From the NCBI GenBank assembly GCA_964199315.1, contig OZ116708.1, forward strand, positions 9,238,001 through 9,302,000: DNA of 64,000 nt, read 5' to 3'. This document shows positions 1 to 36,150 of this stretch, piece by piece (the first letter of the stretch is position 1; each line of letters starts with the position of its first letter). Both the position numbers and the translations under genes were made by a program. The notes under the pieces are model-generated. The model ran no database searches. It was not told the origin of the DNA and was given only the letters and a program-made list of their open reading frames with translations. Origin of the DNA: Orbicella franksi (taxonomy: Eukaryota).

Positions 1-1740
1 CAGTGAACTCCTAGTTGTTGAAGTAGTTATTGTAGCAATCCAAAACATTTGTAGAAGAACGTTGTGACAACTGTACTAGAGATATCACTGGAAATTAAAA
101 GTCAAGTAACCAAACAAGAGAGTGTTGGAGTGATCTGCTAGTTTCTCAAAAGATCGCTTTAACAAGCTGGTGGAGTTCCGGTTTCGGTGCCCGACGGACC
201 GGATTTTGTTTTGAAAATCCAATCAGTGGATGGCTGGACGTGGCTATGTTTTAACCGGACCACTCCGGTTATCAAATGCTCGGCTGTGGATGTTGTAGCC
301 GACATCATTGTCATATACAGACGGTGGATTAGACGCCGAGAGCAGTGTTTGCAGTCGCTGTCGAAAACGGAACTAAAAAAAAATAAACAGAACTGAGTTC
401 GAACATTCAGGGTTAAGTCCCAAGAAGTGGAAGCCGACGCGTGCATGTCTTTCTTTTACGGACTCGGAGTTACTTCCAGAACTAGAAGAAACACGGCAAA
501 CTAAGAAAAGCCAAGACAAGCCAGCAAATCAAACCGCAAGAGGGAGTCTAAGACTTATTGAGGCTGCGTACTCGTTATTCCTTTTTTGTAACTTTCTCGC
601 AACCTATGTTAATTCTAAATAATATTTTTGCACCTACGCAGTTGTGCCAATGCTCGTTGTGATGATATAATTTTGTTTGCTTCAAGTTAAAAGCTTGCCC
701 CGACATTTGATTGGGATTGATAGGAATGGTGGTTGCTGCAATTTATGCCACCTAAACCTAAGGCCTCTAAAAAGAGTATTACGCGTTCTCAAACACGTCA
801 GGCACAGCTGGTTGAAACACCCAAGGAAAGTAATACTTGTGTTTGTCCTGCATCCGGTATCATGAATGTTAAGCAAGAAGAAGAATTTAAAAATTCTTCT
901 TCTTGCTCAACATTCATGGTCAGCATTCATGGTTTTAAAAAGCCTTACCACTTTTTCTGACGCCAATAAAAGGCGACCTAAAAAAAAGAAGCGACAAGTA
1001 TTACCCGAGCTGATACTAGTTTCTGTAGCATTACGCGACTGGAGTATTCCTGATCTTCCTTGCATGGGGTGTTAGTTCATCGAAGGTTTCAGATCCCAAT
1101 TAAATTCGCCGATATCCATTTGTACGCCTGCATGGGTGGAGTTTAGCACAAATAGAGCAAAACGTGTCATGTTCAAGAACACAACACAATAGACGGAATC
1201 AGTTGATTGAATCAGTTGATTGACTTGGGAGGTTACAATTGTTCGGTTTGTAAATACTTCCAAGCAATCAGTTTTATGAGTCAAATTGCACATTTGTAAT
1301 CTCCGTAATGAATGGTCACGTGGTCTGAGTTGGGTGGATGTAAACACTTTAGCCGAATCGGTCTACGATCCCGTCCAGGGCTCAAACCTGGACTGCTTCA
1401 TTTGGAGTCCAGCGCATTAATCATCTGGTCACCGCTTCTCCCGCTAACCACCGGGAAGCGAGTTGATGTACGATCCTCCGGGGTGTGCTTTCAGTCATTC
1501 GAGTCAGATTCTGAAGTTTTTTGCGAGGTCGATCACGAAACACTTCTTTAACTTTTTGGTGAAGGTGAAGGTGAAGAGGAGAAGAGAAACCGAAATATAG
1601 ATCCGAATTACGATTACCGACAGCTCTTCAAACTCCGCGTATTATGGCTCCGATTCATTGTTTTGAAGTCAAGGCTTTTAAGCAAGGTGAAAACGAATAC
1701 AACCACGACGAGGTTGTCGCGACTTGGGGCCACCGTGTTA

Positions 1741-1998
1741 AGCCCAACCGGCTCAAACTCCGTTTTCTGTGGCATGAAGCGGCTAGGAATATTGCTACTC
1801 CCCCCAGATGGGATGCAAATCCATCGCTGGCTACCGGTCAGTATTTTGTTAGGTTATCCCAACAAGTGGCCGGTGCCCATTTATACTCCTGTCCTGTGTC
1901 TTGCTTCAGAACACAACACAATGATACCGGTTAGTGTTCGAAACTGGACCGCTCGATTCAGAGTCCGGCCAGCGCGCTAATCATTTGGTTACAGCGCC
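1741..1998 (-). mobile_element. tRNA-derived SINE with CORE-like central domain (cnidarian type)
   Basis: On the minus strand it has a tRNA-like head with B-box-like GTTTCGAACAC, then GTGTTGTGTTCT..AGACAC..ATAAATGGG.ACCGGC and ..GCGATGGA..GCATCCCATC..GGGGAGTAGCAATA..CCTAGCCGCTTCATGC. More fragments at ~1005-1141, ~1372-1442 and ~28270-28390. Confidence 0.7.
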
Positions 1999-4267
1999 TG
2001 TTCTTCCTTCACCCACGATCAGACGTTCCCGGGTTTTTGCAGGGATGAGTGAGGAACAGTAGCCTAACGGTTAACAAAGAGGGACCAGTAACCTCCAATG
2101 CATGACGGGAAGAGATAGTAGTTGTGTGAGATTGCCCAAAGGGCCTTTTGATAGTTTTCAGGAACGTTTAATTTTCCTGAGAATATAATATTCCTGTAAG
2201 CTTTTTCGGGGAAACAGATGTTCTGTCTAGGACGCTTTTTGATTTTCACACAGAGCACTGTTGTAAACAACGAACATTTGTCATATACACGTATTTCTTT
2301 TGAACATTACACAACCTGTTTTCAAAGATGTCTTTATTTGAATTAAGGTGGTCACAGGAAAAGTGCAAAATAAATGTCTTCAGGACATAGTAATGATATG
2401 AGAGAGGAACTGAAAGAGTCTGAATAATGCACTCAAAGAGACTGAGGAAAATTTCAAGAAAGTTTCCAGTTCGTTTCCTGTGCCCAGTAAACAGAAATAA
2501 AGTGATTTGTGGCCCTTCAAAAAGATATTTGTTGTTTGTTTGTTTGTTTTCGACAAATAGAAAACTACCTTGTTGTCGGTTTAAACTACATAACGGTCAG
2601 AATAACAGCTTTCAATACACGTTTAAACAAGGTTTTTCGCTTAAAATTGACAGGACGAAATTCCGTTGAGCACTCTGCCAGCCTGTTCGTCTCTTTATGA
2701 AACTACAAAATACCAAAAAAAGAACAAAATTCACGACTTTTGTCATGAATAACGCTTTGTGTCATCACGAACCACGGCATCTGAGAATAAAAGAAGACAA
2801 CAATTAGCTTAAATGGCATGGTTTAGTCCGACAACAATGGTGATTCTTTTACTTGTACCGATTTTCGTACAGTTCTTTCAGACTAACTGTCGCAAATCGA
2901 GACAGTCCGCTCGAGAAAGCGAAAAGTTCAGTCAATAAATCAGTCAATCAATCAATCAATCAATCAATCAACTTTATTCAGAGAATGTATTGTAGTGCAG
3001 TGAATGTATTTCGAATTGTATTGTATTTTTTCGCAAACAATTAATCCACCCTATATGTATTCATACATAAGGGAAAGGACAGGCATGTTATTCATTTTGC
3101 ATTTTGTTCATCGATGAAACTCAGAGAGTGCATAAAATGGTTACGTAACCTCTTAAAATCTATCTCCGTAACCTCTTAAAATCTGTCTCCGCTCCAAAGC
3201 ATCTGTGAAATAGAGGGAATAAAATGTTTCTCATAATAGCAACACCAACAATAATTAATTTCATAGTATATTCTATAAAGGGACTGACTGGTCGGGGAAA
3301 GATGAAAAATGTTTTCATGTACAACTGTGCGATATAGTCAAGCGATATAGTCAAGCCTGTAACGAATATTATGACCTATATTTTTATAACATAATTGTGG
3401 TGTACATTTTATCATCTTTAAGTTAAAAGAAAATTTAAAAAATTGTTGGGAAGGAAAAAAATGTTATAGCAAAAAGCGTTCACAAAACCGTTACTCGAGG
3501 ATGCAAATTATGACCCTGAAAACAGCGACCCGAGAAGCATTTCAGAGATGTTTTCGAGACTTTCTACTCATCAAGTTCTTTTAAATTTATTGCGTATTTC
3601 TTTTTTAAAAAAACTTCGCTTCCAGCTACCACAAAATGTTACGTAAAATGATGAAATAACGCTCATTTGCAAGTATGGTAACCTGTACTTGTATTGTATT
3701 TTTTCGAAACAGTGCTTGGTAGAAAACATTCAGAGGATGTTTCAACAAAATCGTTCGGCAATTTCTAAGTGTAGTGTGAAAGAGATAATTTCTACATTAT
3801 TTTATTAAGAACGTAATATACGTTGCAAGTTTAGCATGGCAGAATTGTACTGTAGTGTGTACATTGGGCTTTGGAAAATCCACCTCAATCGCACCACTAA
3901 CAAGTTTCTTACTTCATTTTCAACCATGGATTGCTGTTCTACAGCTGCAGTCGGTGGTGTACTTCTGGACGCACGCATCCTTTCCATTTCACTATGATTC
4001 AATAAAGAAAATGCAAAATGCAAACAACTATTGCTCCTGATTGGGGTTACAATATACTTAGGGGTGTCGGGGATTTGATCATTTCCAGACAAGGAAGAAT
4101 AGTTGCTTTCAGGAGTATTTATATTTTAATTCCGGATTTATTTTAACTAATTTAGTTATTGTAAATAGTAAAGTTATTTTAAATAGTCGTCCGTTTTTGT
4201 CATGAGCCAGGGAGAATGGACAACCACTCCCTACGTTTACGACTTCAAATAAAGTGATCTTACCTTA

Positions 4268-5276: not shown

Positions 5277-5949
5277 TATTTTTTCTCTCAAAATCAGGCA
5301 GTGAGCGTGAGGACAAAACTTCCAAATTAAAAGGGACTGGGACCAAAAATGGTCGTGAGCGTCTACGGATAAACACATGTAGGCCCCTAAGAGACAAGAC
5401 CAGCTGCCAGGGGTCTAATGCTGTCCAGAATAATAGACTAGTTCAGATTTATCGATAGAATTTCCGACAAACATTTTTTTTAGAAAACACTAGAAATAAT
5501 TCATGTGATATCCAACAAAATAATCTTTTTTTTTTTTTTTTTTTTTTACTTTTTAGGGAATGTTTCCATGAGTGTGTTGTTCCTCTAGGAATGTTATCCC
5601 CGACAACAAAATAGGCGTGAAAAAAATATAAACAGACCTGCTATTTCGGATAAGCTTGTCGAGAACATCTTCATAGTATTTCATTGGTCCTCCAGGTGCC
5701 GTATGTGCAATAAGCATCTGTCATACAAGACGAGAAATACAATTATGGCTCGCCATAAAATACTTATTGCCCTCGAAGAAACCAAAACAAAGGAGGCATT
5801 TATTGTACTCCATGCGTATAAAGAGGTGATGAAATATTGGTAGTATGCGAATCGATCCCGATTTGAAGAGACCAGGCCCACCCGGTGGTCGCGGTTGATA
5901 TTTCTAGAAAGCTTGTAAGGAGATTTTGAGCTAAGGCTCTTCATATGGT

Positions 5950-8683
5950 CTACATAATTTTTGTGCGATCAAGTAATTTCGCATGGAAGTGGCAGAGACA
6001 CTAGAACGAATTTAAAACGATTTCAGTGATCCTCAAGATGGTTTTTGGGATTAAAACAACTCAAACGGTATTGTAAGTAGATAGGAAAGTATTTTTTTTG
6101 AGCTGAATTGAGAATTTTAGCTAAACGATCGTACGCGTCGCTTTGCACGTGTTTGCGTGTTAGGACATGCATATTGCTCAAACACAACTAAGTACCCTTC
6201 GGATAGCCGGTTTTACGCTTGGAATCTTTGTTATTGGGATCGCTTATTTGTATTGAGTAATCTTACGTTGCGTAGAGCTCAAAAGCTTCGTTTTGCAGCG
6301 TCTTCGTTGGGGATGTGTAACTTGACTATAGTGTGCATATATGGGAGGTTGTCATGGTGACTCTAACGCGATACTTCTGTTTACGTCTCGAAAATAATCG
6401 TGAACCAGTATTGTGGTGCACGACAGCACCACAATACTCCATTAAGAAAATACATTTATAGTATATGCTTGAAGTCGACTGGAGACGCTTACCTCCTCCA
6501 CTACAGCAGGGGGTAGACAATATTTCCTTTTCTCACTATCTACGATGACATTCTTGGCAACTCCAATCTCCTCCAACAGTGATGGCCTCCTCTTCCCAGC
6601 AAACGTATCCTTAATTGTACGGCATTTCTCCTTGGACTTCGCCAGGCTTTCTTTGTAATCCCATGTGGGTACTATCACTGCGCGAGCTGCTTGGAGCTCA
6701 TCAGCGAAAGACATTCGCCGTTCACCAGACGCTGATTCAAGAGCAGAACCACAATTTTTAATCACGCGACGCCGCTCTGAGGCCTTCTTCTCAAATTGCT
6801 TGTTCTTTGCATGACCATCAATAACTGATTTGGCTATTACCAAGCTGTCAGCGAGCGAGTGTCTTTTCTGGAAACTTTGGCGTTTAATGATTTTTCGTCT
6901 TTCCACGTTCCGAGAATCTCTGAGCCAGTCATCAAAGAGAACCTGGATTGTGGATCTTTCATAGCTCTGGGCTGCCTGTGGCACTCCTCTGTAACTGTCC
7001 TGACCATTAACAGCAAGTGTATTATTCGCGGTAGAGACCGCTGACGGTTTGACAACTGTTAAAAGCAGGGGAAGAGAACAGTTAATGCTCATCCACTGAA
7101 CCTCAAACCTGTTAAAATGAGGTTACTATCAAGAGAACCAGGGCTAGTAACATAATTTTATTACTAGAATGCTAAACCTCATGATCCTAGAACCAGAATT
7201 CTGAGTGATATTGTTACGATAAAGTGAAAAATACAAGAGCCTTGAGACTGCAAAAAGCCAAACATAAATTACCTAAGTATATAAATGCTGCTGACATTCA
7301 AATATCGCCCCTCAACTAAAACTATTTTTTGTTAGTTTCCAGAGAAACTGTCTTGTTGCGTCGTTGAGCAAGTTTTAAGTCACCATTTTCTCTCCCAGAT
7401 CCCGCTCGTCGTCCGCGTGCCTTTTTCGATCGTCCGCACTGACCAAGAGCCTGCAACAGGCCAAAATTACACAATTTGAAACTGTATTCACTAGTACCTG
7501 GAGCATTATAAGGTGTCGATGAACGTTCCTGCAGTGGCTGTGGGGAAGGGTGATAGGGTGTAGATTCAAATTCTGTGTGGTGACTTTCATCAACTCTGAT
7601 GCTTAGTTCCTCATCATCATTCCATCCAGAATCCACATTTTCCTTGTTCATTCGTCTGTACTTTTCCTTGTAATACTTCCTTATAGGCCTGCATTGAAAA
7701 CAACAGTTTGCAGCAAGTTTTCAGTGGACATTCATACAGGGGCTATCATGCGTTATCACGATCACGTGTCGTCGGGTTAAAATTTGTGTTATCACTTTCA
7801 GGGTGTCTCAATAATAATAATAATAATAATAATAATAGCTAAAAACTGGCTATCCCCTAGTGCCCCAGGACCATGGTTTGGTCTCGGCCCTACGGACTCT
7901 AAGCAAACATTACGTGAGGACGATAATAATAATAATAATAATAATAATAATATAATAAACTATATTAAAACGATGGTTGAAAAGTCACAGAATGACCCGA
8001 AATGTAGAATCTGTAAGCAGAGTAACGAGACCATTAGTCATATTGTAAGTTCGTGCTCGAAACTGGCACAAAAAGAATACAAAAGGAGACATGATAACGT
8101 GGCTAGAGCAATCCATTGGGACCTGTCAGGAAAATGTGGGTTTGAACGAAAGGAGAGATGGTATGACCATGTTCCAGACAGTGTGCTTGAAAATGAGGAT
8201 TACAAACTTCTATGGGACTTCAGTGTGCGAACAGACCATGAAATAGGGGCTAGGAGACCGGATTGGTGATCATTGACAAGAGAGACAAGAGCTGTCAGAT
8301 TATAGATGTGGCAATTCCAGAGGATAATGGGGTGAGAGAGAAGGAAGATGAAAAAGTTGAAAAGTATCAAGATCTAGCAAGAGAAGTTCGAAAAATGTGG
8401 GGTGTGAGGACAAAGGTTATTCCAGTGGTAGTGGGAGCATTGGGATCAATACCACTGAGATTGAATGACAGTCTGAGAGCCATTGAGGTGGGCATTCCTG
8501 TTGGACTGATCCAGAGATGTGCATTGTTGGGGTCGGCAAGAATTCTTAGAAAGGTGCTGGAGATGTAGAAAGAAGAGAAAAAGCAAACAAGGGGTGTTTC
8601 TTGGCTTCCCTAGGCAACTTGTTGTTGCCCGGAGCCAATGGCGAAACCAGCTTCAATATCATCAATAGCTGTGCGAATCTTTA

Positions 8684-8717
<34 letters not shown>

Positions 8718-11700
8718 TAATGACTTTACTGGATAACACAATTACTGGTAAAACCGGTAGTTCTCACTGTGGTCCTTAAAATCTACCCAACAAATACAAT
8801 TACAAATTCGAATAGGAAAATACAAAGAAAAAATACAATTGAAAATTGTATTTTCTCAATCTCAGTGAATTGACTATCGTCAGAGTTATCAGCATATACA
8901 TTGTAGAATAACACCTGACAATAATTTGCCAGGTAAAGTATATTTAGGCAATCCTCTTTCGCAACGTTTGAAATGAATTCCTAAAGCAATGAATAAAATA
9001 TTGAACAGTTAATGATTATGAGTTAGTTTGATCCGTTTTCACAAAGCGTGATTTCGGTTCTTTTAAAGGGTTTCTTTCACCATCCGTTTTTTCGTATCCC
9101 GGAGGTTTCTGTCCTTAGTGGTGTAAAACGAGATTCTCAGTTAAATTCTAATTAATAAGAGTGATGCACCTACAGGTTTAATATAATCCTACATCGTTGC
9201 AACAGTTATCTAAGATAAAACTGTTCAATAGATACACTGGCATCTTACTGTTCCATCGCTTTCTTTTGGATATTTCCAGAGCAGAACAGTACAAAATGAC
9301 GTGCTATAAAGACTGTGCTTACCATGCAAACACGCAGAAGGTAATCATCAGCAAAAGGAAAAATAATCCTCCAAAAACAGGTACAGCTATCAAGGCAATG
9401 GATATACCACCTCTGTTGTGTTCATTCGTCTCTAATCCCTCGTCTGCACCTAGAAAATCATCAAAACTTCTGCTATCTGCTAATGAAGTACCACTCCAGC
9501 GAATATCAGAAACTGGAGGCGAGAATGGTTCTGCGCTTGATTCTGTCTCAGAGTTATCAAACTCGAAATCGTTTGTGTCTCCAGATGCATATCTTTTTCG
9601 CTTGAAAGAAGATTTATCTGTTCCCCCTTCAAATGCAATTCCTTGGGTATCAGTAGATTTTGACAGCAACTTTTTCCTACTTAACTTTATCAGCAGGCGT
9701 TCTGATGCCAATTTCACGTCGGCATCAGCTTTCTTGATAGACTCTGTAAATGGTATAATGATGACAGTAACAATTACAAGCAAAGGACAGGTAAACTTGT
9801 CTTATGAATGACCGAAAAAAAAAAAAAAAGAATTCAAAGGCTGACCAATATGGATGATAAAAAGCTGAACGTGATATTACAAATGTTTAAAAATCCAACC
9901 TAAAATTTGGGTGTAAAGATTATATATAGATTGCTTCATGGACAGTGCGCACGTACGGTATTTACGCACGAGATTTCTGATACAAAAACGAGTGCGTAAA
10001 TACCGTACAAAGCACTTTCCATGCTGTAATTTGTTTATTTTATACTCACTGAGATTTTCACCCTCAACCAGATTTTCACCCTTCATTCGCAGAACAAATG
10101 TCAAGTTATGTTTTTATTCCGTCTGAGTGCCAGTACTTTGTCGCTCCTTCAAAAACCTAGTGTAAATATTTTTCGTACAGAATGTTTACCTGGTCATCAG
10201 TCAACGCTTCAGCTGCATTTGATTTGTTTCCCTTGCCTTGCTTTTTTTTTTAAGTCGTTTGCTTCGAGCTTCCACACATTTCCTTGCTTGGTAAAACTTT
10301 TTGTCGTCGATAGCACTTACGGCATATTTGCCTTCTTTAAAACTTTTCTTGCCTTTTCCTTCTGTTTGAGGAATTCGCTAAGCAAGCTAACCTTAACGTC
10401 TCGTTCTGCTGTTCCTAGATGTACTTTTTAATGGGTTTATTGCATGAGCTTTTCATGCGATCGATTCTATGCGAAAATCTCAGTAAGTATGAAATAAAAT
10501 CCCATTTGATCTTCCCATGTTTGTGAATTACATTGCTCAACCTTTAATATTTCGCCTATTTATTCCCTGCATTCTCCAGCTTCTTGTCACATGGGAAGTC
10601 TTAGAATTCCTCCTGTTTCAAGTCTTAGAATTCCCCCTGTTTCAACTATTTATCGGTTTCTGATTCTGGGTTCATGTTTTCAGGTGCACTAGATTTCCCC
10701 TCGGTATCAGATTATGATACTTCACCTGTTTCGAATTCAGGGCCCTTACCTTTAGGTTCACCAAAGTCCCAATCAGAGTCTGATCCTGACAGTTCGTCTG
10801 TATCTGATTCTGGGTCCATACCTTCAGGTGAGTGGGAGTCCCAATCAGTGTCAGTTCCTGACTGCTTCTCTGTCTGTACTTTCCGTTCGATATCATATTT
10901 CTCTGATTCAAGGTCCCTATCTTCAGGTGCTTCAGAGTTCTCGTCAGTGTCAGATCCTGACAGTTTGTCTGTCTCTGACTCAGGGCCCATATCTTCGGGA
11001 GCACCAGAGTCAGCTCCCGATCCTGACAGTTCGTCAGTTTCTGATTCAGGGTCCATATCTTCAGGTGCACCAGAGTTCCAGTCGGTGTCCGATACTGACA
11101 GTTGGTCATTCTCTCTTTCAGGGTCCATATCTCCAGGTGCCCCAGAGTCCCAGTCGGCGTCCGATGCTGACAGCTCGTTTGTCTCTGATTCAGGGTCCAT
11201 ATCTTCAGGCTCAGAATTCCACTAGAATAGAAGATTTTTGAATTGTTAAACTGTTAAAGGTAAGTAAAGCCTCAGTCAGTTTCCGCCTTTAAAACCACAC
11301 TATGTGTTGCTGATTAGGTGAAAAAAAAGTATTTCATGCTGAGTTTCACCAGTGCCCAGTCCTCTTGCACGCGACAGCTGCAACCGCAGTTGAGCGGCAG
11401 TCAGAGCATATTGTCCAACCGAAACAACACGATAAAAATCTATTTCTTTGTAGATAAGAAAAAAACAAAGAGAATACTAAAGTTTTGTTGCGCAATTTTG
11501 AACTTAACTCGAGAATTCTGGGTTTATTTTATTAAAGGAGCAAGATGTTTTGTTCCCTATAACCCAGCATTTTTATACCTGACTATACTGGACAATCGAG
11601 TTGGCGGGTGTGGCCTATCCAGTTTTGGCATTATTTTGAAGCTTGTAGCAACAAAATGTCTTTTGAATATATTTCATTTATTACACGTCGTGGTTTTTGC

Positions 11701-14295: not shown

Positions 14296-15135
14296 ATTCT
14301 AACGCGTTTATCTTGGCCATACGCGAGATTCTACTCTCGATAAACTGAAAAGAAATAGCACTGCTAAGCAAAGTTATCGATTTTGATATACTTATTTAAG
14401 GCCAAGATAAGCCATATTTTGCTTTGCGAAATCGGGGACAAGTTCCGTGGCTTTAGAATACAGCTACTAAATACATATTAATTTATTTCAACAAAATACA
14501 TTTTGCTTCGCAGATTGACGCTCTAACCTTTAATAAATAATGTATCCAATTTCTCATTTCCGAGTAAAACTTAAAAACAGTCCGTCATCTTCAAACAACT
14601 GGCAGATTCAGTGAAATATCTCGGGAAATGTCCGGAGAGCCGAACGTCAAAACTGGAGAGTTATTGGGTACCTTTAGAATTGAATTAAACGTTTTATGCT
14701 AATGATAATTTGAATTCAACTATTACGAAAGCTTGACAAGCTCAGAGTGAACTCAGATTGCATAGCGAAAAGTGTGTATGATCCAATTTCTGTGCCTAGT
14801 TATAAGAGGTCAATTCAAGCCAAGAGAAATTTATCTCAAAAAGAAGCAAAAGAACAGTACATCCCTCAAAGCTAAACAACAACAACAACAACAAAAACTG
14901 GACAAAACAAGAGGAAAGATGCATTTAAAACTTCAGAGTATTCCAGAAAGCAAACATTTCTTAGCTGCCGCTCGTGCGCGCTTTGCCAATAAACGCACGG
15001 TTTTACTTAGTGTAAAAAAGGTGTGCAAAATGGCGCAAAAGCTAATAAAGTATTGTAAAAGACGTAGAGATGTTATTTACCTGGAGCATTGAAGGCAAAT
15101 GTAAACGCAATCAAAACGATCCAAATCACTCTCAT
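5950..15135 (-). CDS. Gene A: uncharacterised type I single-pass membrane protein (~807 aa) with signal peptide, low-complexity basic then acidic ectodomain, TM helix, and cytoplasmic triple helical repeat ending in a CLC motif
   Basis: Phase-consistent exons: 15135-15081 (MRVIWIVLIAFTFAFNAPG, donor CAG|GTAAAT, phase 1); 12797-12151 (alternative donor 12051); 11221-10726 (acidic repeat); 9743-9323 (TM GISIALIAVPVFGGLFFLLLMITFCVFA, donor TG|GTAAGC, phase 2); 7688-7498 (WPIRKYYKEKYRRM...); 7055-6493 (donor GAG|GTAAGC); 6000-5950 (CLCHFHAKLLDRTKIM*). Total 2424 nt = 808 codons. The middle junctions are less certain. Confidence 0.65.
7958..8683 (+). mobile_element. 5'-truncated R4/Dong-clade non-LTR retrotransposon (CCHC knuckle + restriction-like endonuclease) inserted in a (TAA)n microsatellite, in an intron of gene A
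   Basis: CRICKQSNETISHIVSSC, KRRHDNVARAIHW, LLWDF, RRPD-[frameshift at ~8263]-VIIDK..IIDVAIP, KVEKYQDL, IPVVVGALG and ALLGSARILRKVL*. Flanked by (AAT)n on both sides. Confidence 0.9.
9900..10560 (-). mobile_element. Decayed Crypton-like (DUF3504/tyrosine recombinase-related) element in a gene A intron
   Basis: The minus strand at ~10170-10340 reads KEGKYAVSAIDDKKFYQARKCVEARSKRLKK-[fs]-QGKGNKSNAAEALTDDQVNILYEK, typical of ZMYM/QRICH1-like DUF3504 proteins. An imperfect palindromic end lies at ~9940-10015. Boundaries are approximate. Confidence 0.7.
10672..11221 (-). repeat. Coding tandem repeat of ~72 bp (24 aa) units, consensus ~W[DN]SGAPEDMDPESETDELSGSDTD, about 7 copies plus a decayed unit after the stop
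   Basis: The units are visible in ORF 10712..11200(-). The repeat continues past the in-frame TAA at 10712-10714 (SDTEGKSSAPENMNPESETDK). Confidence 0.85.
11581..11832. repeat. Direct tandem duplication, 131-bp period, 2 copies, in a gene A intron
   Basis: GACTATACTGGACAATCGAG begins at 11581 and 11712. The copies are nearly identical. Confidence 0.9.
13825..14240. mobile_element. Non-autonomous repeat with terminal hairpin, resembling cnidarian Crypton-type elements
   Basis: Inverted arms AGTGGAGTACAATTTAGGGAGTAATCG (~13846) and CGATTACTCCCTGAATTGTAGTCCACT (~13935). The family assignment is from recall only. Confidence 0.5.
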
Positions 15136-28461: not shown

Positions 28462-31400
28462 TCAGTCAAAATTTGCTGCTGAAAAAGTCGAAGGACGCTC
28501 TGCAGCTGGGCTAGCGAAAGAACTCTCTGAGTCTGAGTGGGATTCTTTGTTGGAAGAAGATTTTGATTTGAAGGAGAACAGCTTACTGTTGAAAAAAAAC
28601 GCATCGGATATACAGCATAAATTAAACAAGGAACTGTTAGAACTACATGTTGTCAAGTAGCGTGGATTTCCGAGCTCCTTTTTTTTTATTGTTTTTTTCT
28701 TTTTCGTTTTTGAAAGACGCTTAATAGCTGCTTAATGTTTGGGTATATTGCACCTAAAGAGGCTTTGCTTATGCTTTTTTGTTTGTTTGTTTGTTTGCTT
28801 GTTTGTTTGTTTTTGCATTAGGTTGTTTAGTTTAATTGTCAACCCATTAAGAAAGGTCAACAGTTGGTATTTAAAAACTCACGTCAGTTTTGCTTTCTTT
28901 GTTTGACGCTTAACTACTTTAGCTCTATATTTTATCGACAACGGAGTTTGATAACATCTTTGCTGTAAAAGACAGGTATTCTGATGAAACAAGGGAATAG
29001 GTACTTACCTGGGTAGTTTAAAAAACTTCCCCCGTCGAGCTCTCTTGATGTGCTTTTCACAGTAATAGCAGAGACATCCACCTTCTGGATCAACAGGAAT
29101 GCGAGGCAAATTATAAATATCTCGAATGGCCTGCAAGCCTTGCAACACGTCACGTGGCTTGATCCCTCGCGCTTTCTTCATCTTAATATCCTTCTGAAGT
29201 TCCTGTTTTCAAAAGTGTAAAAAAAAGAAAAAAATGTCAGTTGTTGTCGCTGTTAACGAATAACATTTATACCCATGCCCCCACCACACACCCCGCCAAC
29301 CCCCACCCCGCTGCTACATAACTGTTTCAATCGCCTGCGACGGAACAAGGAACACTGAGGCTAGCAAGGGAAACAACTTGCACATTTTCCCCTAGTTTCT
29401 ATCACGCCATATCAGACTTGTGTGGTCTTTCCATAAGCGAACAAATATTTTAGCTTGACTGCACTGCCACGTGCGAAAATACGAACCTTGTTTCCAAAAG
29501 GCCTGTTATGCTACCGAAAGCGTAGATACTTTTAATTATTACCTTCCATGTTTTGTAATCCTTGTGGTTCAACACTCGTATCTTTGCGGAGTTGCTAGTT
29601 GAAGCACCCCTATCCAAAGACGTCATCGATTCGTCTTCCCGTCGTACCTCTCGCTTGGCCTTAGGACCCGCGGCATCTCTTGGATGAGCGCGGCCTAGTA
29701 AAATTATGTCCTTTGCAAAAGCGATTTCTTGAGCAAGGGTTTGCTTGGGTCGGCCTGGGTACTTAAGTGTGCGCTTGATCAGGTGGCGGCACATGGATGA
29801 TCGTTTGTCGCGTTCTCTGTCCACATTCTCGTTCATAATCATTGACTGTAGAAGGAAAAAACAACATATAGATCTTACTGCGTTGAGCACCCTCAGTCTT
29901 CAGAAAAATCCCCACCCTCTTTCTTTCGACAAAGCAATGAAATGTAAAGTAGATAATAAAGTAATGAGAATGAGAGCAATCCATTTACAGATTTGTCATT
30001 AATTTGGCTAGCTCCGCGAGAGAGCCTGATATGAATCAAATCATGTGCTTTGATTGGCTCTCCGAACAAGCAAACAATGAACCGTGTTGTACGGTCGGGA
30101 CTGCTCGTTCTGTCTCGCTAGAAATGGTCTGCCCATGCATAAAACTTGGCTAGTCAAGATGACTGAAAATGGTCTGGTTGTTGCTGTTTTTTTAAGTGTC
30201 TTTAGGAACCTTGACCGCGTCTCTGTCCTTACATACGCAAAAGAAGAAATTACTCTTGTGTTCAAGACCTCACTATAGGTCAAAAACCGATATATCGTTT
30301 TTATCAATCAGGTGTCGCGACACCACCTAATCGTTTCCCACTAAAAGTTTTACGTCTTCATCAACCCAGCCTTGAAAGACTCTAAAAAAGAAAATGTATG
30401 TCTGCCTTTCCATTCGTAACCCTCAATGACAATTTCATACTCTACACTTGTATGTCGCGTACCTTTGCGCGCAAAATGCTCTCAGCCAATGAGTGCTTTG
30501 TTTCCTTGGTTTGGTGTTTGATCACAAGCCTCTTTACTTTGTTTTTGTCCACAAGGTTTTTCTTTTCGCCCAGAATCCGTGAAATTGCCGCGTTCAAGTC
30601 ACTTTTGAATCCACTTAAATCCTGCTCAGATATCAGATGTTTGATGAAACGTCGGTTCTCCAAAGCCTTTCTTCCGCCAGTCAGAACCTTTCCTGAAACG
30701 TACACGACACGTGTTTGCAGAAGTGGTCTACAAGCCATTGCCTAACGGAATATGCTTAGGAGTGGAATAATAACCTATCGACGGAGATTTCTCCCCTTCT
30801 CGCGTGCGATTTTTTCCCCCGAATATACTGTAAAATGTTTACTGTTATTTCTACAAATATAAAGTAGCTAAAGTCTGCAGTTGTCCACCCGTCTGTTCGT
30901 CCGTCCGTTCGTCTGTCTGTCTGTCTGTCTGTATTGTTTTGTTTTTTTTTGGAAATCTATTCTGTCCAGACTGTTACCAACCAATTACGCCAATTTTTTT
31001 TTTCTATTCTTCGTAGTTTGTAAGATTAGTGATCTCATTTAATCTAAATACAAGGCCTGGCGTTGATTAACTTTGTTCAACCTCTGATCTTTACCTTGCG
31101 GTAAGTCTGTTGATGCTGTTGGCGGTGGAATTGTTGGAAGAGTCAATAGCGGCGTTCCATCTGTGGACAAGAACAGACTGTTCGTTATATTATTAAATTA
31201 AAATCAGTTTTCAAAGCTTCCAACTTCTTTTAGTTTCCAAGTTCCAATTCCTATTTTTTTCATCAATGTTAATGATTCCTCTAAAATTTAAAGTATGGTC
31301 TGACATGTTAATTTAACCATCAGACGTACTGAGAGAGGGAGGGACGAAAACGATTAGGCCTCCACCACCTCACCCTTCGTTAATTAATTACTTCTTCACC

Positions 31401-34400
31401 AATTATTGTCCGGTAGTTGAGGTTAATTGCTTGAATGTCAAACACAAACGAAAAGTAAGTTAACATCCTGATCTAGCTAGTAGCAACTTACCTTGGTTGG
31501 ACTTTTCATTGACAGCAGACGTCTCTTCATCGTCGTTATCACTTCCCGTAATATCGATGATAGCATCACTTGTTGTCGCATTTTTCATTTCTGCTTCTTG
31601 GCTCGTGTAACTCATTTCTCCAAAAGAGGATTCAGATTCAATGTCAGATATCACCGAAGATTCCTCGTCATCATAATCAGGCCCCATCGTTATCACCACT
31701 TCTTCCTTGCTTGATTCTTTGTCGGCATCTTTGACTGCACTCAGCACCTCGCTTTCTGATTTGTCTCTTGAGTTGTCAATTTCCTCGTCATCGTCCTCCA
31801 TAGTTATCACGACTTCATTACGTGCAGCAACAGGTGTCTTACAGGACTCTGTTGAGGAACTGGTACCATCGCTTGCCATGAAGACGCTAGGTGTCGATTC
31901 ATCGGAAACAGTAGGCAGTAAAGACAAGCTGGGCTTAGATGGGTGTGGCGAGAGTGAGGACGCAAGGGTTGTCTGTTCGGATGATGTAGATAGACCAGGC
32001 CTTGGTTGAGTTGTAAACGGAAGAGGACTGTGGACAGTGTTGTCTGTCAGGTCAAAAGCCGTAGCTGATGAACGGGTCTCGATCGCCAAATCAGAATCAC
32101 CTACTTCCGTTTCGGATGCCAGTGAGATGCTTGACACAGATGTCAAGGGCGTTTCAGTTGATACATGTAAGTCAGACAAAGACGATGTTGTGAATGAAGA
32201 ATCCAGGGATTTTGTCTCAGGAATCTCATTAACCGTCCAAACCTCTGTCTTAGGCGGGTCATCGAGTGTAGGAACGGCAATCAATGGAGTTGACCTTGGT
32301 GTGTCGGTCAGTGTCCATATTTTCTGTTCTTGTGTCGGATGATCAGGCGATTGAGATAAAGGGACTGATTGTGATCTTCTTGGAGACGTCGTTGGTGTTG
32401 CCACAGGACTAGCGCCCTTGTTACGTCTTGTGTTTGTCCGGTCAAATATGACTTCCTCCTCGCTCAGTTCTTCGCTGAGGTAACCAGTTGAGGGGAAATT
32501 TAATCCCATCTCACGTTTATAACGTCGTCGCCATCGTTTCTTACAAATTCCCCTGCAAAGGAAATATATACATTTCGAAATGGAGAAATGTTTGATAACT
32601 ATAATACCGTTGTATAAAATGTACACGAGTTTTAAAACAGTAATTTTCTTCTGAGAAACTGGCTAATTCAAAATACAACTTCCAATATTTAAAATTGCCA
32701 AAGTCTAATGCCACTTACATGTATATGTGTGCATGATGCATTTAATCTGGGTGGTGTAAATAAGGGGTATAGCTTAAAAGTGAGAATAAGTGGCATCTTT
32801 TATCTTGTGAATAGCTCCAATTTTGTAATATTTATGACATGGATACGTGGGGTATACTTTCAATTAAATAATCTGACATAAAATTTTATTTACGTAACAA
32901 TTATACTAGTTAGGGGTTATATAAAATAAATATATTATAAGTAAAACTGCGACTAGATACTGGGCAGATGTCATAACGCACTAATGTGTTATTATTAGAA
33001 ACAAACTGGCATACACACGTGCATTTTTTGTAATTTCAAACAGTTAAACTAATCAATGGACACAAATATACGTTCTAAATGCGAATTGCGTCTCAATAAC
33101 AGCTGCAATAATTTGTAACAATAAGTACTGAATGGATACAATAATTTTATTGCGCCTCAGTATCAATGACAAATTTAGAAAAAATAATCCTCCCCTAATT
33201 TACTTGGATACGTTTGGGTATGCTCTCCATTAAAATGAGATCAAGTTTTATTTAGTAGTAAATGCATTATACCGATAGTGAAGCTACCAAAAAAGAGTAT
33301 TTCATTTACTTTTTACGGTTGTTTAAGCTTTTGGTATGTACAGTAAAATGTTATGGTGAATTAATCCATTGTATGCTCATAATATTTACCCATTTGGAGG
33401 AAGGAGGCGCAAAATATCGTAATTTTAATTTCAAAGGAAAAACCGTCTGTCTCTTGACTCTTTCGGTCATTAAAATTTTCCATAAATTAATATAATTAAG
33501 TTTTAAAACAAACAGCTATTAGGTACAGGAACTAAAGCAAATTGATTTTGAATTTTTCCACTTAAAAGGTTTAAGAATATTAAGGATCCTAAATTAAAAT
33601 TCATCCGTTCAGCCGTAGATCAAGTAACTTATTCTCCCTACTGACTAACATAGATTGGTTTTAAGTTTATGTCTGAGAATTTAGCAGTGCGTCGAGACCA
33701 TATGAAGGGTTGGTTATTTAGTCCAATATTGTCAATAGTCGTCATGAGAACATATTTAACGTTACACTGGGTTTTGGAAATTAAAGAACACTAAAATCGA
33801 AAACTTACCAAAGTCGACGAGGAACACCAGTGAAAATAAACAATAACATCAAAATCCCTGCCAAGATTCCTGCAATAGTGGCTGCCGGTGAAGTCGACTC
33901 TACTGGCTCTTCATCCTCCGATTGTAATTTCTTCTTCTTGATTTTGAAATGTTTTCCTTTTTTACTGTCATCTAACTTGACGGGATCGTAAGCCGCTTTC
34001 CAACGAAGCCCTGAAGATGCCTTCACTCCAGGATAAACAGCCATCTTGTGTTGTGGCATTGCTGATGTGCCGGCATGTCGCGTTGACCCTTTGTGTCCAT
34101 CCACCTTTGGTTCGCCATCTGGTGAAGAACTGTCCTGCTTATCATTACTGCGGGAAGATTTCTGGTCATCCTGTTCGGTAGTGTTGCCTTCTTTTGAAAG
34201 CAAATCTGATTCTGCATCAGCCGCATCGACTGACGGAATAACCGTTTCTTCAGTTGGTAAAATCGTCAACTTGAAATGCGCTGTGATTTTCGTCTTGTGT
34301 GGTAAACCCGTGATAGATGATGGTGGGGCTTTCTGGAACGCAAAAGCCTCCATGCTTGTGCTATCTTTCAAAACAGAAGCTGATGGAGGCATTCCAGTAC

Positions 34401-36150
34401 CATGTGATGATTTTAAGACGTTGTGTTGTCTTGCCGAACGTCTCATGGCGAACCTAAGTTTTTGCATAGTTGAGACGTTTCTGATCTTGTTATTAGTAGT
34501 CCATTTAATGGACTTTTGGGCGTTCTTCAACGCCGGTAAAACTCTACCGTCCAGTGAGCCGACTCGTTCAACATCAGATGAGAATGAATCCGTAGTCGTT
34601 GATATTTGAACGGGAAACTTGTGTTGTTGGGAGCGAAGCGGTACATCAGTAGATCTCGCTGAGGGATTCTTGAATCCGATCACTTCGCTTGAAGACTCTA
34701 CAAAAAGATGGTTCGGTTCTTCTGCAATTTTAAGAACAGGGATGCAAGTTTAATATGGAAGTCAAAAGACGAATGCAAAAGCTTTAAAGTAAAAAAAAGA
34801 AAAGAGAGAGAGAGAGAGAGAAAAAAAAAGATCTGGAGATATATTGAAATAAATGGCCAAAAATTAAAATGCGGTCAAAATTATTTAATTAAGCTAGGCA
34901 GAAAAGCTCAAAAAGTGTTTTGGCAGCCCTCTGGCAGCGCTGGTTTTGAAGTGAGCATTTCTCAAACCGCGTACGTTTTTTGCAAGGAAAGTTCCGACAT
35001 TAATCTTGGGGTAAAACTAATTAACCATGCAGAAGATTTTGAATGTTATTTACGTTGATAAAAAATTTATCTTAAGCTTAACTTAATGTGAAATATGATT
35101 ACAAAAAAAGCAAGTAAGAATTATTTGTCCTGAGTTTTGCACGCGTACACTTCGTTCAACTGTAAGCGAGTGCAAGTGATTATTCCAAGTTTACCATAAC
35201 TTTCATAATCATTTTTATCATTTCCATCGACGTGAATTTTCGACTCTTACCTCGGTGTTTCTGTGTGACAAAGAATAGTATCTTGCAGCCAACGTAAAGA
35301 GAAAGGCTTAACGTGCACTGCGGCCTGCCTTTCACCTCCGATTTCTCCAACCATACCCAAACCGGCGTAATTTGTCGATAAAAACGTGAATAATCCGTTG
35401 TCTTTTAGACTCAAAATGAGCTGAACGCTAATTTTCAACATCTGTCCGGCTATATGAAGAGTTTCATGCATGCAAACTTGATTTTTTCGTTAGGAAAACT
35501 TCAAGCCCCGACTATCAAACTCAGAAACGTTATGTTGGAAACTTCGTCACTTTCAAAATAGTAAACCCACTCAGTGCGGAATTGATCGAGTGCCTAGCCA
35601 ATCAGGAGTTAGCAACTTCGCGATTGACAAGAAAAGAAACCAAATCAAGATTGAAATGTCTTTTTTTTTGTTTTTTTGTTTTTCTTGCTACTGCTCTCGA
35701 AAGTTCTCAGGGGCAAAAATTTACTCTAATTGGAAATTAAATAGCCGACATTTCTTCAGCCTTCTTGATAAAATCGAACAAGAGCAAACGCGCGTAGCAC
35801 AGGAAAGGGCAGCACTCCCTCTCAATCAGATTAACAAGAAAAGCCACACCTTTCGTCTTCAAGGGCGAAATAAATTACGAGGGAGCTGGTATGGAAACAG
35901 AGGAGTTCTTTCCCTTGCCTGTTAACTTTTTTTTCGATTCCTATGACGGAGGGGCCTAAACTGTTCCCTTTTCAAAATTCGTCTCTGACCGGCATTTAGA
36001 TTTCTAATTCGTGTATTTTTCCGCTCAAAGACGTGGTTTCTGATAAATCGTAAAAGCGAATTTAGAAGATAGGTTCCTCTTACCTTTGCAGAGTGAGCTT
36101 GTTACCAGGAAACAAAGAAAGATCAATATAAATACTTTTCTCTTGTCCAT
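28462..36150 (-). CDS. Gene B: uncharacterised type I single-pass membrane protein (~977 aa), related to gene A in its cytoplasmic C-terminal region
   Basis: Eight phase-consistent exons: 36150-36084 (MDKRKVFILIFLCFLVTSSLCK, AAG|GTAAGA); 34697-33809 (ends in TM ATIAGILAGILMLLFIFTGV, TG|GTAAGT, phase 2); 32552-31492 (S/T/P- and D/E-rich); 31160-31095; 30692-30463; 29845-29543; 29202-29009 (CAG|GTAAGT); 28585-28462. Total 2934 nt = 978 codons with no internal stop. Confidence 0.8.

What the first reader, a model, noticed from the sequence alone, without database searches (positions are those of the whole stretch)
6493..7055. Uncatalogued cytoplasmic repeat shared by two otherwise unalignable membrane proteins
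Gene A has three copies: RRKIIK..KRHSLADSLVIAKSVI, RRRVIK..RRMSFADELQAARAVI and KCRTIK..RRPSLLEEIGVAKNVI. Gene B has two: KRLVIK..KHSLAESILRAK|SMI (completed only across the 30463->29845 splice) and CRHLIK..KQTLAQEIAFAKDII. Both proteins are signal peptide + low-complexity ectodomain + TM, with a Trp codon split by a phase-2 intron just after the TM. Each unit places a basic PKA-type site (RRxS/KRxS in A) at the start of an amphipathic helix. This suggests a phospho-switchable docking repeat, loosely reminiscent of AKAP helices or WH2 motifs (inference). I do not recognise the family.
Basis: partly seen in the sequence, partly recalled or inferred. Interest (0 to 1): 0.75.

Follow-up and report, generated by a model that had tools for sequence, protein, structure and literature searches.

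The report
Uncatalogued cytoplasmic repeat of coral membrane proteins
Two neighbouring coral genes for single-pass membrane proteins carry a conserved ~43-residue repeat in their cytoplasmic tails, with a PKA-type RRxS site capping a short helix; it also occurs in sea anemones, matches no catalogued family, and its function is still only inferred.

Summary
Window 6493-7055 (minus strand) is a real internal exon. RNA contigs from two runs show GT..AG joints at both ends and an open frame through five exons.

The exon encodes three ~43-residue repeats. Each is a basic helix (E-R-R-x-V/I-I-K), a loop (R-R-x-S) and an amphipathic helix (S-L/F-x-D/E-x-I/L-x-x-A-K/R-x-V-I). Gene B (29.0-34.5 kb) has two clear copies and one degenerate one.

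- **A and B are related.** A repeat model built without any B sequence scores gene B at 59 bits, against at most 15 in 2000 shuffles. A profile of gene A alone finds the Oculina ortholog of B at E=1.2e-5 among 1.8 billion proteins.
- **Distribution.** Named hits come only from stony corals (Acropora, Oculina, Desmophyllum) and sea anemones (Nematostella, Exaiptasia). All are annotated "uncharacterized". They carry 3 to 6 or more repeats behind unrelated ectodomains (mucin-like, acidic, or Sushi-HYR-Ig).
- **Catalogues.** There is no match in Pfam, solved structures, the protein atlas or the papers searched.
- **Constraint.** Paralogs give dN/dS of 0.15-0.25.
- **Structure.** AlphaFold2 places the conserved Ser exactly at the N-cap of each amphipathic helix.

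My reading is a Hexacorallia-restricted, probably phospho-regulated docking module. Function and partner are inferred only. Interest is moderate.

The parts
6493..7055 (-). Gene A exon 3: the cytoplasmic exon with three tandem repeats (the finding).
   Evidence: RNA contig joints 7498->7055 and 6493->5717 in runs X1 and X4. Translation. Conserved in 69 coral ORFs.
6805..6921 (-). Repeat A1 (ERRKIIK ... KRHS-LADSLVIAKSVI).
   Evidence: HMM 54.7 bits. Translation checked. S66 is invariant in alignment A1.
6658..6798 (-). Repeat A2 (ERRRVIK ... RRMS-FADELQAARAVI).
   Evidence: HMM 64.3 bits. Translation checked.
6529..6639 (-). Repeat A3 (KCRTIK ... RRPS-LLEEIGVAKNVI).
   Evidence: HMM 34.3 bits. 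Translation checked.
9322..9745 (-). Gene A exon with the juxtamembrane ectodomain and the TM helix. It ends in the split Trp codon (TG|G).
   Evidence: The X4 contig spans 9745-9322 and joins to 7687. Hydrophobicity peak. Frame.
7498..7687 (-). Gene A exon 2: the cytoplasmic juxtamembrane segment (PIRKYYKEKY...).
   Evidence: Joints 9322->7687 and 7498->7055. Frame.
5638..5717 (-). Gene A exon 4 (80 nt), downstream of the repeat exon.
   Evidence: Joint 6493->5717. The X4 contig has a loose end at 5638 whose 30 letters map to 3962-3991.
3805..3991 (-). Gene A last coding exon, ending in the stop codon.
   Evidence: The loose-end 30-mer maps here behind an AG acceptor, and the frame stays open to the stop.
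15076..15135 (-). Candidate signal-peptide start of gene A. Unverified.
   Evidence: Sequence scan only. No RNA evidence.
33809..34466 (-). Gene B exon with part of the ectodomain and the TM helix. It ends TG|GTAAGT (split Trp). Its 5' limit was not determined.
31492..32552 (-). Gene B large cytoplasmic low-complexity (Ser/Thr/acidic) exon.
   Evidence: Aligns to the Oculina ortholog P0098. Splice sites and open frame.
31095..31160 (-). Gene B small exon.
   Evidence: tblastn with P0098 gives 89% identity. Splice sites.
30463..30692 (-). Gene B exon holding the degenerate repeat B0 (30556-30675) and most of repeat B1 (30463-30555). It ends ...LRAK|.
29543..29845 (-). Gene B exon that completes repeat B1 (SMIMNENVD, 29819-29845) and holds repeat B2 (29684-29815). 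It ends ...KDYKTWK|GTAATA.
   Evidence: The junction is reproduced in P0098 and in paralog L013.
29005..29202 (-). Gene B last coding exon, with a C-x-C-Y-Y-C motif and the stop codon.

Best explanation
The stretch is an expressed internal exon of a type-I single-pass membrane protein (gene A). It encodes three copies of a ~43-residue cytoplasmic repeat that no catalogue lists.

Each unit has three pieces:
- a basic helix: D/E-K/R-x-A/S-x-E-R/K-R-R/K-V/I-I-K;
- a short loop carrying R-R-x-S;
- a 12-13-residue moderately amphipathic helix that the Ser caps: S-L/F-x-D/E-x-I/L-x-x-A-K/R-x-V-I.

The neighbouring gene B and several Hexacorallia proteins with unrelated ectodomains carry the same module in 2 to 6 or more copies. 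It therefore behaves as a portable intracellular cassette.

Most likely mechanism (inferred, not shown): the helices are multivalent docking sites for a cytoplasmic partner. A basophilic kinase of the PKA/PKG type phosphorylates the capping Ser. That changes helix formation or partner choice; for example, it could create R-R-x-pS sites for 14-3-3. In this way cyclic-nucleotide signalling would be coupled to the cell-surface protein.

Shown: the exon and its splicing, the repeat, its homology between A and B, its conservation and purifying selection, its restriction (among named hits) to corals and sea anemones, and the absence of catalogue matches.

Inferred: phosphorylation, docking, and the identity of the partner.
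For: - **Splicing and expression.** RNA contig joints sit at 9322->7687, 7498->7055 and 6493->5717 in two runs, and the frame is open across five exons.
- **Repeat statistics.** 360 repeat instances reduce to 147 non-redundant ones. Conservation is E6 80%, R8 82%, I11 90%, R20 76%, R21 72%, S23 89%, L/F24 94%, D/E26 83%, I/L/V28 98%, A31 90%, I35 91%.
- **A-B homology.** BLASTP gives E=3e-7. The HMM built without B scores 59.3 bits against a shuffle maximum of 15.2. The A-only profile hits the gene-B ortholog P0098 at E=1.2e-5 in 1.84e9 proteins.
- **Portability.** Nematostella P0087 has Sushi-HYR-Ig, a TM helix and 3 repeats. P0083 has an acidic ectodomain and 5 repeats. P0082 has a mucin-like ectodomain and at least 5 repeats. 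Exaiptasia P0084 has 3 clear repeats and 2 weak ones.
- **Purifying selection.** dN/dS is 0.15-0.25 in the repeat region between paralogs.
- **Structure.** AlphaFold2 with 27 sequences gives pLDDT 70-88 over the repeats. Helices begin at the residue after S66, S115 and S158. pTM is 0.34, so no compact fold is predicted.
- **Kinase consensus.** Gene A has four [RK][RK]x[ST]-hydrophobic sites, all inside the repeat exon: three at the conserved helix-capping Ser and a fourth (KRQSF) in the loop of repeat A1.
- **No catalogue match.** Pfam, PDB sequences, ESM Atlas and papers gave nothing.
Against: - No phosphorylation or binding data exist.
- The Ser plus D/E at +3 forms a classical helix capping box, so structure alone could explain its conservation.
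- The window's gene B repeats (TKHS, PKQT) and some Nematostella repeats (GSQGLLSS, ICKGSLLS) lack the dibasic site yet keep the helix. The helix and the E-R-R-x-V-I-K element, not the kinase site, are therefore the invariant core.
- Raw polyA reads of two runs gave almost no depth on gene A, so expression is low or restricted.
- The taxonomic limit rests on one profile search and on the few hits that carry names.
Confidence: 0.45

Rival explanations
1. Purely structural repeat. The units form a helical rod, spacer or loosely packed helical array under the membrane. The Ser is only a helix N-cap. The Arg/Lys clusters bind acidic phospholipids or simply balance charge. No phospho-switch is involved.
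For: - S-x-x-D/E capping-box statistics: S 89% and D/E 83% at +3.
- AlphaFold2 predicts long helices that run from one unit into the next, for example H67-106.
- Repeats without the dibasic site persist in gene B and in Nematostella.
- The linkers are rich in charged E/K/R residues.
Against: - R at -3 and -2 together with a hydrophobic residue at +1 is conserved well beyond what a cap needs.
- pTM of 0.34, and pLDDT of 0.52 in the Atlas model of P0084, argue against a stable fold.
- The hydrophobic moment is only modest, 0.24-0.45.
Confidence: 0.3
2. AKAP-like anchoring helices. Each amphipathic helix binds the docking/dimerisation domain of a PKA regulatory subunit, which would make these proteins transmembrane A-kinase anchors that carry their own substrate sites.
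For: - The core I/L-A-K-x-V/I-I resembles the centre of known RII-binding helices. This rests on my own knowledge of AKAP-IS and Ht31-type peptides and was not tested against a model.
- PKA-type sites lie next to the helix.
- The genome encodes RI- and RII-type D/D domains.
Against: - The helix is only 12-13 residues long and is followed by Gly, Pro or an acidic run.
- The outer hydrophobic pairs of a four-turn AKAP helix are replaced by D/E.
- No Pfam or PDB similarity was found.
Confidence: 0.07
3. PP1-docking pairs. The R-V/I-I-K element acts like a SILK motif and R-x-S-L/F like an RVxF motif whose Ser phosphorylation releases the phosphatase, as at kinetochore KNL1.
For: There are two short basic-hydrophobic elements about 12-20 residues apart, and the second has a phosphorylatable Ser at the 'x' position.
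Against: - The obligatory V/I of RVxF is not conserved. Position 22 is P 15%, M 12%, H 8%, D 7%, L 6%.
- L is as common as F at the last position.
- The first element lacks the G/S of SILK.
Confidence: 0.03
4. Chance similarity of low-complexity basic sequence, or ORF artefacts that are not expressed.
For: The region is rich in K/R/E. Depth in the raw polyA reads was near zero.
Against: - Spliced RNA contigs exist in two runs.
- dN/dS is 0.15-0.25.
- The shuffle controls fail to reach the observed score.
- The repeat is conserved from corals to sea anemones.
Confidence: 0.01

Closest known systems
AKAP amphipathic helices (RII/RI D/D-binding peptides such as Ht31 and AKAP-IS)
   Same: A short amphipathic helix with a central hydrophobic-A-K-x-hydrophobic-hydrophobic core, found in scaffold-like proteins, with PKA sites nearby.
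   Different: - The helix has three turns instead of four to five.
- The outer hydrophobic pairs are missing.
- Gly, Pro or acidic residues terminate it.
- It comes as tandem ~43-residue units with an extra conserved E-R-R-x-V-I-K helix.
- No sequence-model match exists, and binding is untested.
CREB/CREM kinase-inducible domain (pKID, Pfam PF02173)
   Same: The architecture is a helix, then R-R-P-S-hydrophobic, then an amphipathic helix whose N-terminus is the PKA site. This is the textbook case of a phosphorylation-dependent docking helix (own knowledge).
   Different: - No Pfam hit at E<=10.
- pKID is a single copy in nuclear transcription factors.
- The spacing and helix sequence differ.
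- Here the module is repeated in tails of membrane proteins.
PKA regulatory-subunit inhibitor site / PKI pseudosubstrate (R-R-x-S/A-hydrophobic)
   Same: The R-R-x-S-L/F-x-D/E string resembles the RII inhibitor site R-R-x-S-V-x-A-E. The coral's own RII-like ORF reads R-R-R-A-V-A-A-E.
   Different: There are no cyclic-nucleotide-binding domains and no PKI family match. The element is repeated and is followed directly by a helix.
14-3-3 mode-1-like phospho-motifs (R-x-x-pS-hydrophobic) in tandem
   Same: After phosphorylation, several R-R-x-S-L/F sites about 45 residues apart could engage 14-3-3 dimers bivalently (inference from the motif definition).
   Different: There is no Pro at +2. The residues after the Ser are predicted helical rather than extended. 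This was not tested.

Membership tests
Any Pfam-A family | Profile match at or near the gathering score. | tested here: not met
   There were 0 families at E<=10 for the window exons. There were 0 families over the repeat regions of P0082, P0083, P0084, P0087, P0091 and P0092 at E<=1; only the ectodomain domains of P0087 matched.
AKAP (RII-binding helix) | A 14-18-residue amphipathic helix with hydrophobic pairs on four successive turns. | tested here: not met
   The predicted helices are 12-13 residues from the capping Ser to V-I, and are then followed by D-G-H, V-P or an acidic run. Positions flanking the I-A-K-x-V-I core are mostly D/E.
AKAP (RII-binding helix) | Binds the D/D dimer of a PKA regulatory subunit. 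| not testable with these tools
   This needs an overlay or ITC assay. The one complex-prediction job gave no verdict (see Tried and rejected).
WH2 actin-binding motif | An N-terminal amphipathic helix followed by an LKKV/LKKT-type motif; Pfam PF02205. | tested here: not met
   No Pfam hit. No L-K-K-V/T-like string follows the helix in any repeat.
CREB pKID | Match to Pfam PF02173. | tested here: not met
   No Pfam hit at E<=10. The resemblance is architectural only.
PP1 RVxF / SILK docking | [KR]-x(0,1)-[VI]-{P}-[FW], with an upstream [GS]-I-L-[KR]. | tested here: not met
   The V/I position is variable (P, M, H, D, L). The last position is L 55% and F 39%. The upstream element is R/K-V/I-I-K without G/S.
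PKA/PKG-type basophilic kinase substrate consensus | R-R-x-S/T-hydrophobic. | tested here: met
   Gene A has four such sites, all in the repeat exon. Family-wide, R is 76% at -3, R 72% at -2, S 89% at 0 and L/F 94% at +1. The window's gene B repeats do not meet it. Actual phosphorylation was not tested.
Solved structures (PDB sequences) | A significant profile match. | tested here: not met
   The best E-values were 0.39 for the exon profile and 0.27 for the repeat profile. Both are chance-level.

The most novel reading that the evidence does not exclude
The repeat defines a Hexacorallia-specific family of transmembrane signalling scaffolds. Each unit would be a kinase-inducible helix: a pKID-like switch placed on receptor tails. 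Phosphorylation of the capping Ser by PKA or PKG would toggle multivalent recruitment of a cytoplasmic partner such as 14-3-3, an R-subunit or a cytoskeletal adaptor. That would link cell-surface adhesion or acidic-matrix proteins to cyclic-nucleotide signalling in corals and sea anemones.
Probability: 0.15. Interest if true: 0.7.

Novelty: new variant of a known kind. Interest (0 to 1): 0.42.

Why it matters
If that holds, membrane-proximal targets of the pathway in cnidarians would be worth identifying.

A conserved, portable cytoplasmic cassette with several PKA-type sites, attached to acidic, mucin-like or adhesion-type ectodomains, would be a concrete candidate for such a target. It would also be a clean model of a phospho-capped helix motif.

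Even without a function, the result gives three things:
- a usable 43-position profile for annotating a set of "uncharacterized" anthozoan proteins;
- corrected gene models for two coral genes;

Tried and rejected
- **Complex prediction.** Two copies of the coral RII D/D domain (L022:1468-1602) were folded with residues 40-180 of the repeat exon. The tool returned "no answer" (score 0.00, partner pLDDT 40, after two busy refusals). This is not evidence for or against binding.
- **ESM Atlas.** Feature searches with the exon, with P0084 and with the P0083 tail gave no usable hit. The structural neighbours of the Atlas model of P0084 all have TM below 0.5 and are meaningless for a pTM-0.19 model.
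- **Word-seeded homolog searches.** The Nematostella tails (P0083 1030-1250, P0087 485-625) found only themselves.
- **Names for weaker hits.** None carry a name, so their taxa are unknown.
- **Paper searches.** Searches by locus names, accessions and descriptive terms found nothing.
- **RPEL.** I considered it from memory because repeat A3 reads R-R-P-S-L-L-E-E. I rejected it: the register does not fit, the other copies lack Pro, and there is no Pfam hit.
- **Acidic dileucine sorting signal.** I considered E-x-x-x-V/I-I. I rejected it as the main reading because the first hydrophobic residue is rarely Leu and lies in a predicted helix.
- **Fold search.** I did not run one with the AlphaFold2 model, because a pTM of 0.34 would give meaningless matches.
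- **Gene B splicing.** It could not be checked with reads, because the single read-laying run went to gene A. RNA libraries hold up to 0.81 of the words of 29000-32600. That exceeds the exon share, so it does not prove splicing.
Full report
**What is at the coordinates**

The minus strand of 6442-7092 is one open frame. RNA contigs of two polyA libraries (X1, X4) carry joints 9322->7687, 7498->7055 and 6493->5717. All read CT..AC on the + strand, which is GT..AG for a minus-strand gene. A contig loose end at 5638 continues with 30 letters that map to 3962-3991, behind an AG acceptor.

Joining 9745-9322, 7687-7498, 7055-6493, 5717-5638 and 3991-3805 gives one open frame of 480 residues. In order, it holds:
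- an ectodomain juxtamembrane segment;
- a strongly hydrophobic TM helix ending F-A-W, with the Trp codon split TG|G;
- a Pro-, Ser- and acidic-rich (low-complexity) cytoplasmic linker;
- the repeat exon;
- about 86 further residues.

The gene, however, goes on for two more exons. Two raw-read polyA runs gave almost no depth here, so expression is low or restricted to certain tissues or conditions.

**The repeat**

The exon holds three units: 6805-6921, 6658-6798 and 6529-6639. This gave 360 instances, or 147 after removing those at least 80% identical. The model has 39-43 positions, with consensus K-R-D-R-K-A-S-E-R-R-R-V-I-K-E-Q-T-S-Q-G-K-R-R-R-S-L-A-D-E-I-E-I-A-K-S-V-I-L-E-E.

The best conserved positions are E6 (80%), R8 (82%), I11 (90%), K12 (72%), R20 (76%), R21 (72%), S23 (89%), L/F24 (94%), D/E26 (83%), I/L/V28 (98%), A31 (90%), V34 (75%) and I35 (91%).

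AlphaFold2 with a 27-sequence alignment gives pLDDT 70-88 across the repeats but pTM of only 0.34. The predicted helices are 47-63, 67-106, 116-127, 133-151 and 159-177. The three conserved Ser residues (S66, S115, S158) are each the residue just before a helix, that is, the N-cap. The structural unit is thus a basic helix, a loop with R-R-x-S, and a moderately amphipathic helix (hydrophobic moment 0.24-0.45). No confident tertiary packing is predicted.

**Gene B**

I placed the gene B exons using the Oculina patagonica ortholog P0098 (NCBI model), consensus splice sites and an open joined frame. They are ...-33809, 32552-31492, 31160-31095, 30692-30463, 29845-29543 and 29202-29005.

Repeat B1 is indeed completed only across 30463->29845 (L-R-A-K|S-M-I). 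P0098 and the chromosome-9 paralog both reproduce this junction. B2 lies at 29684-29815. A third, degenerate unit (N-R-R-F-I-K ... S-G-F-K-S-D-L-N-A-A-I-S-R-I-L) lies at 30556-30675, but it scores only 8-9.5 bits.

Gene B has the same TG|GTAAGT split-Trp donor after its TM helix. Its large low-complexity exon (31492-32552) is cytoplasmic, not extracellular.

**Is the A-B likeness real?**

Yes, on three counts:
- Pairwise BLASTP gives E=3e-7 over about 80 residues.
- A repeat HMM built from 26 units that exclude every B-family sequence scores the gene B segment at 59.3 bits. In 2000 shuffles the mean was -2.1, the SD 4.1 and the maximum 15.2.
- A profile made only from gene-A-type exons, run over 1.84 billion representatives, recovered the gene-B ortholog P0098 at E=1.2e-5.

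**Family and distribution**

In this 497-Mb genome the exon has two paralogs about 300 kb away on the same chromosome, at 59-62% identity with three repeats each. Gene B has a repeat-bearing paralog on chromosome 9. It also has repeat-less relatives on chromosomes 10 and 11, interleaved with the A paralogs. A repeat-profile scan of the genome finds only these five genes and one weak extra hit (a lower bound).

Between paralogs, dN/dS in the repeat region is 0.15-0.25.

The word-seeded search gave 69 coral ORFs at 49-99% identity. The exhaustive profile search gave only 47 proteins at E<=1e-3. The hits that carry names are:
- Acropora digitifera LOC107348846;
- Oculina patagonica KAL9960061;
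- Desmophyllum pertusum (two proteins);
- Exaiptasia LOC110250287;
- Nematostella LOC5522360, LOC116610250 and LOC5517363.

All are annotated as uncharacterized or hypothetical. One further named hit, a Wolbachia protein matched in 19 short stretches (P0100), I judged spurious and left out of the repeat analysis.

The Nematostella proteins are type-I membrane proteins with quite different ectodomains. One is mucin-like, one is acidic, and one has Sushi-HYR-Ig with a sub-threshold TSP1 match. Their tails carry at least 5, 5 and 3 repeats respectively. The repeat is therefore a portable cytoplasmic cassette known so far only from Scleractinia and Actiniaria.

**Comparison with known families**

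Nothing in Pfam matches. PDB sequences give a best E of 0.27-0.39. The ESM Atlas gave nothing usable, and the paper library gave nothing.
- AKAP helix: the helix is too short, and its flanks are too acidic or are broken by Gly or Pro.
- WH2: there is no LKKV/T motif.
- RVxF: the V/I position is not conserved.
- What does fit is the PKA/PKG substrate consensus, and, architecturally only, the CREB kinase-inducible domain.

**Mechanism**

I commit, at moderate confidence, to a multivalent, probably phospho-regulated docking module. The invariant core is the pair of helices. The R-R-x-S element is strongly but not universally kept, and it is lost in the window's gene B.

The main rival is a purely structural helical repeat in which the Ser is just a capping-box residue. 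The data here cannot separate the two. Phosphoproteomics and pull-downs with the tail in different phospho-states would.

**Verdict**

This is a new, lineage-restricted repeat family of moderate interest.

Noticed in passing
window 7784-8568 (+), inside the gene A intron: ORFs that look like a retrotransposon fragment, flanked by AAT/poly-Asn microsatellites. RNA-contig depth here is up to 3400, against about 10-20 on the gene A exons. The intron therefore hosts a highly transcribed repeat family.
   Followed up: no
L005 (G000:C10:22615688-22618912), L006 and L007 (G000:C11:9497052-9500240 and 9534324-9537542): These gene-B paralogs keep the large acidic exon, the '...KIRVLNHKDYKTWK' exon and the C-x-C-Y-Y-C exon. 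They lack the small exon and both repeat exons. In L007 the acidic exon runs straight into the post-repeat sequence. The repeat cassette has been lost or gained by exon-level change within the family.
   Followed up: partly
window 28462-28656 (-), and matching ORFs in L005-L007: A second 'SKLFSFKSKS...' segment lies downstream of the gene B stop codon. In the paralogs this segment ends in another '...AKIRVLNHKDYKTWK' copy. It may be a partial tandem duplicate or the start of a further gene.
   Followed up: no
L022 (G000:C12:11472687-11475782), ORF 1459-2589 (+): A complete PKA regulatory subunit lies in one uninterrupted 377-codon frame. It has a D/D domain, the inhibitor site R-R-R-A-V-A-A-E with Ala at the P-site, and two cNMP-binding domains. 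It may be an intronless gene or a retrocopy.
   Followed up: no
window 10672-11241, both strands: A highly acidic D/E/S-rich repeat ORF on the minus strand (DPESETDELSGSD-type units) lies upstream of the gene A TM exon. It is probably part of the gene A ectodomain. The Acropora digitifera relative P0091 also has an acidic repeat ectodomain.
   Followed up: partly
window ~9400-9450 and ~33950-34000 (-); P0091: A short ectodomain juxtamembrane motif (S-G-L-R-W-K in gene B and in P0091, D-I-R-W-S-G in gene A) lies roughly 45-75 residues upstream of the TM helix. It hints that A and B are homologous outside the repeats too.
   Followed up: no
G000:C11:17010038-17010145 (+): A weak extra match to the repeat profile (E=0.024, 23.9 bits) lies outside the five known genes. 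I did not examine it.
   Followed up: no
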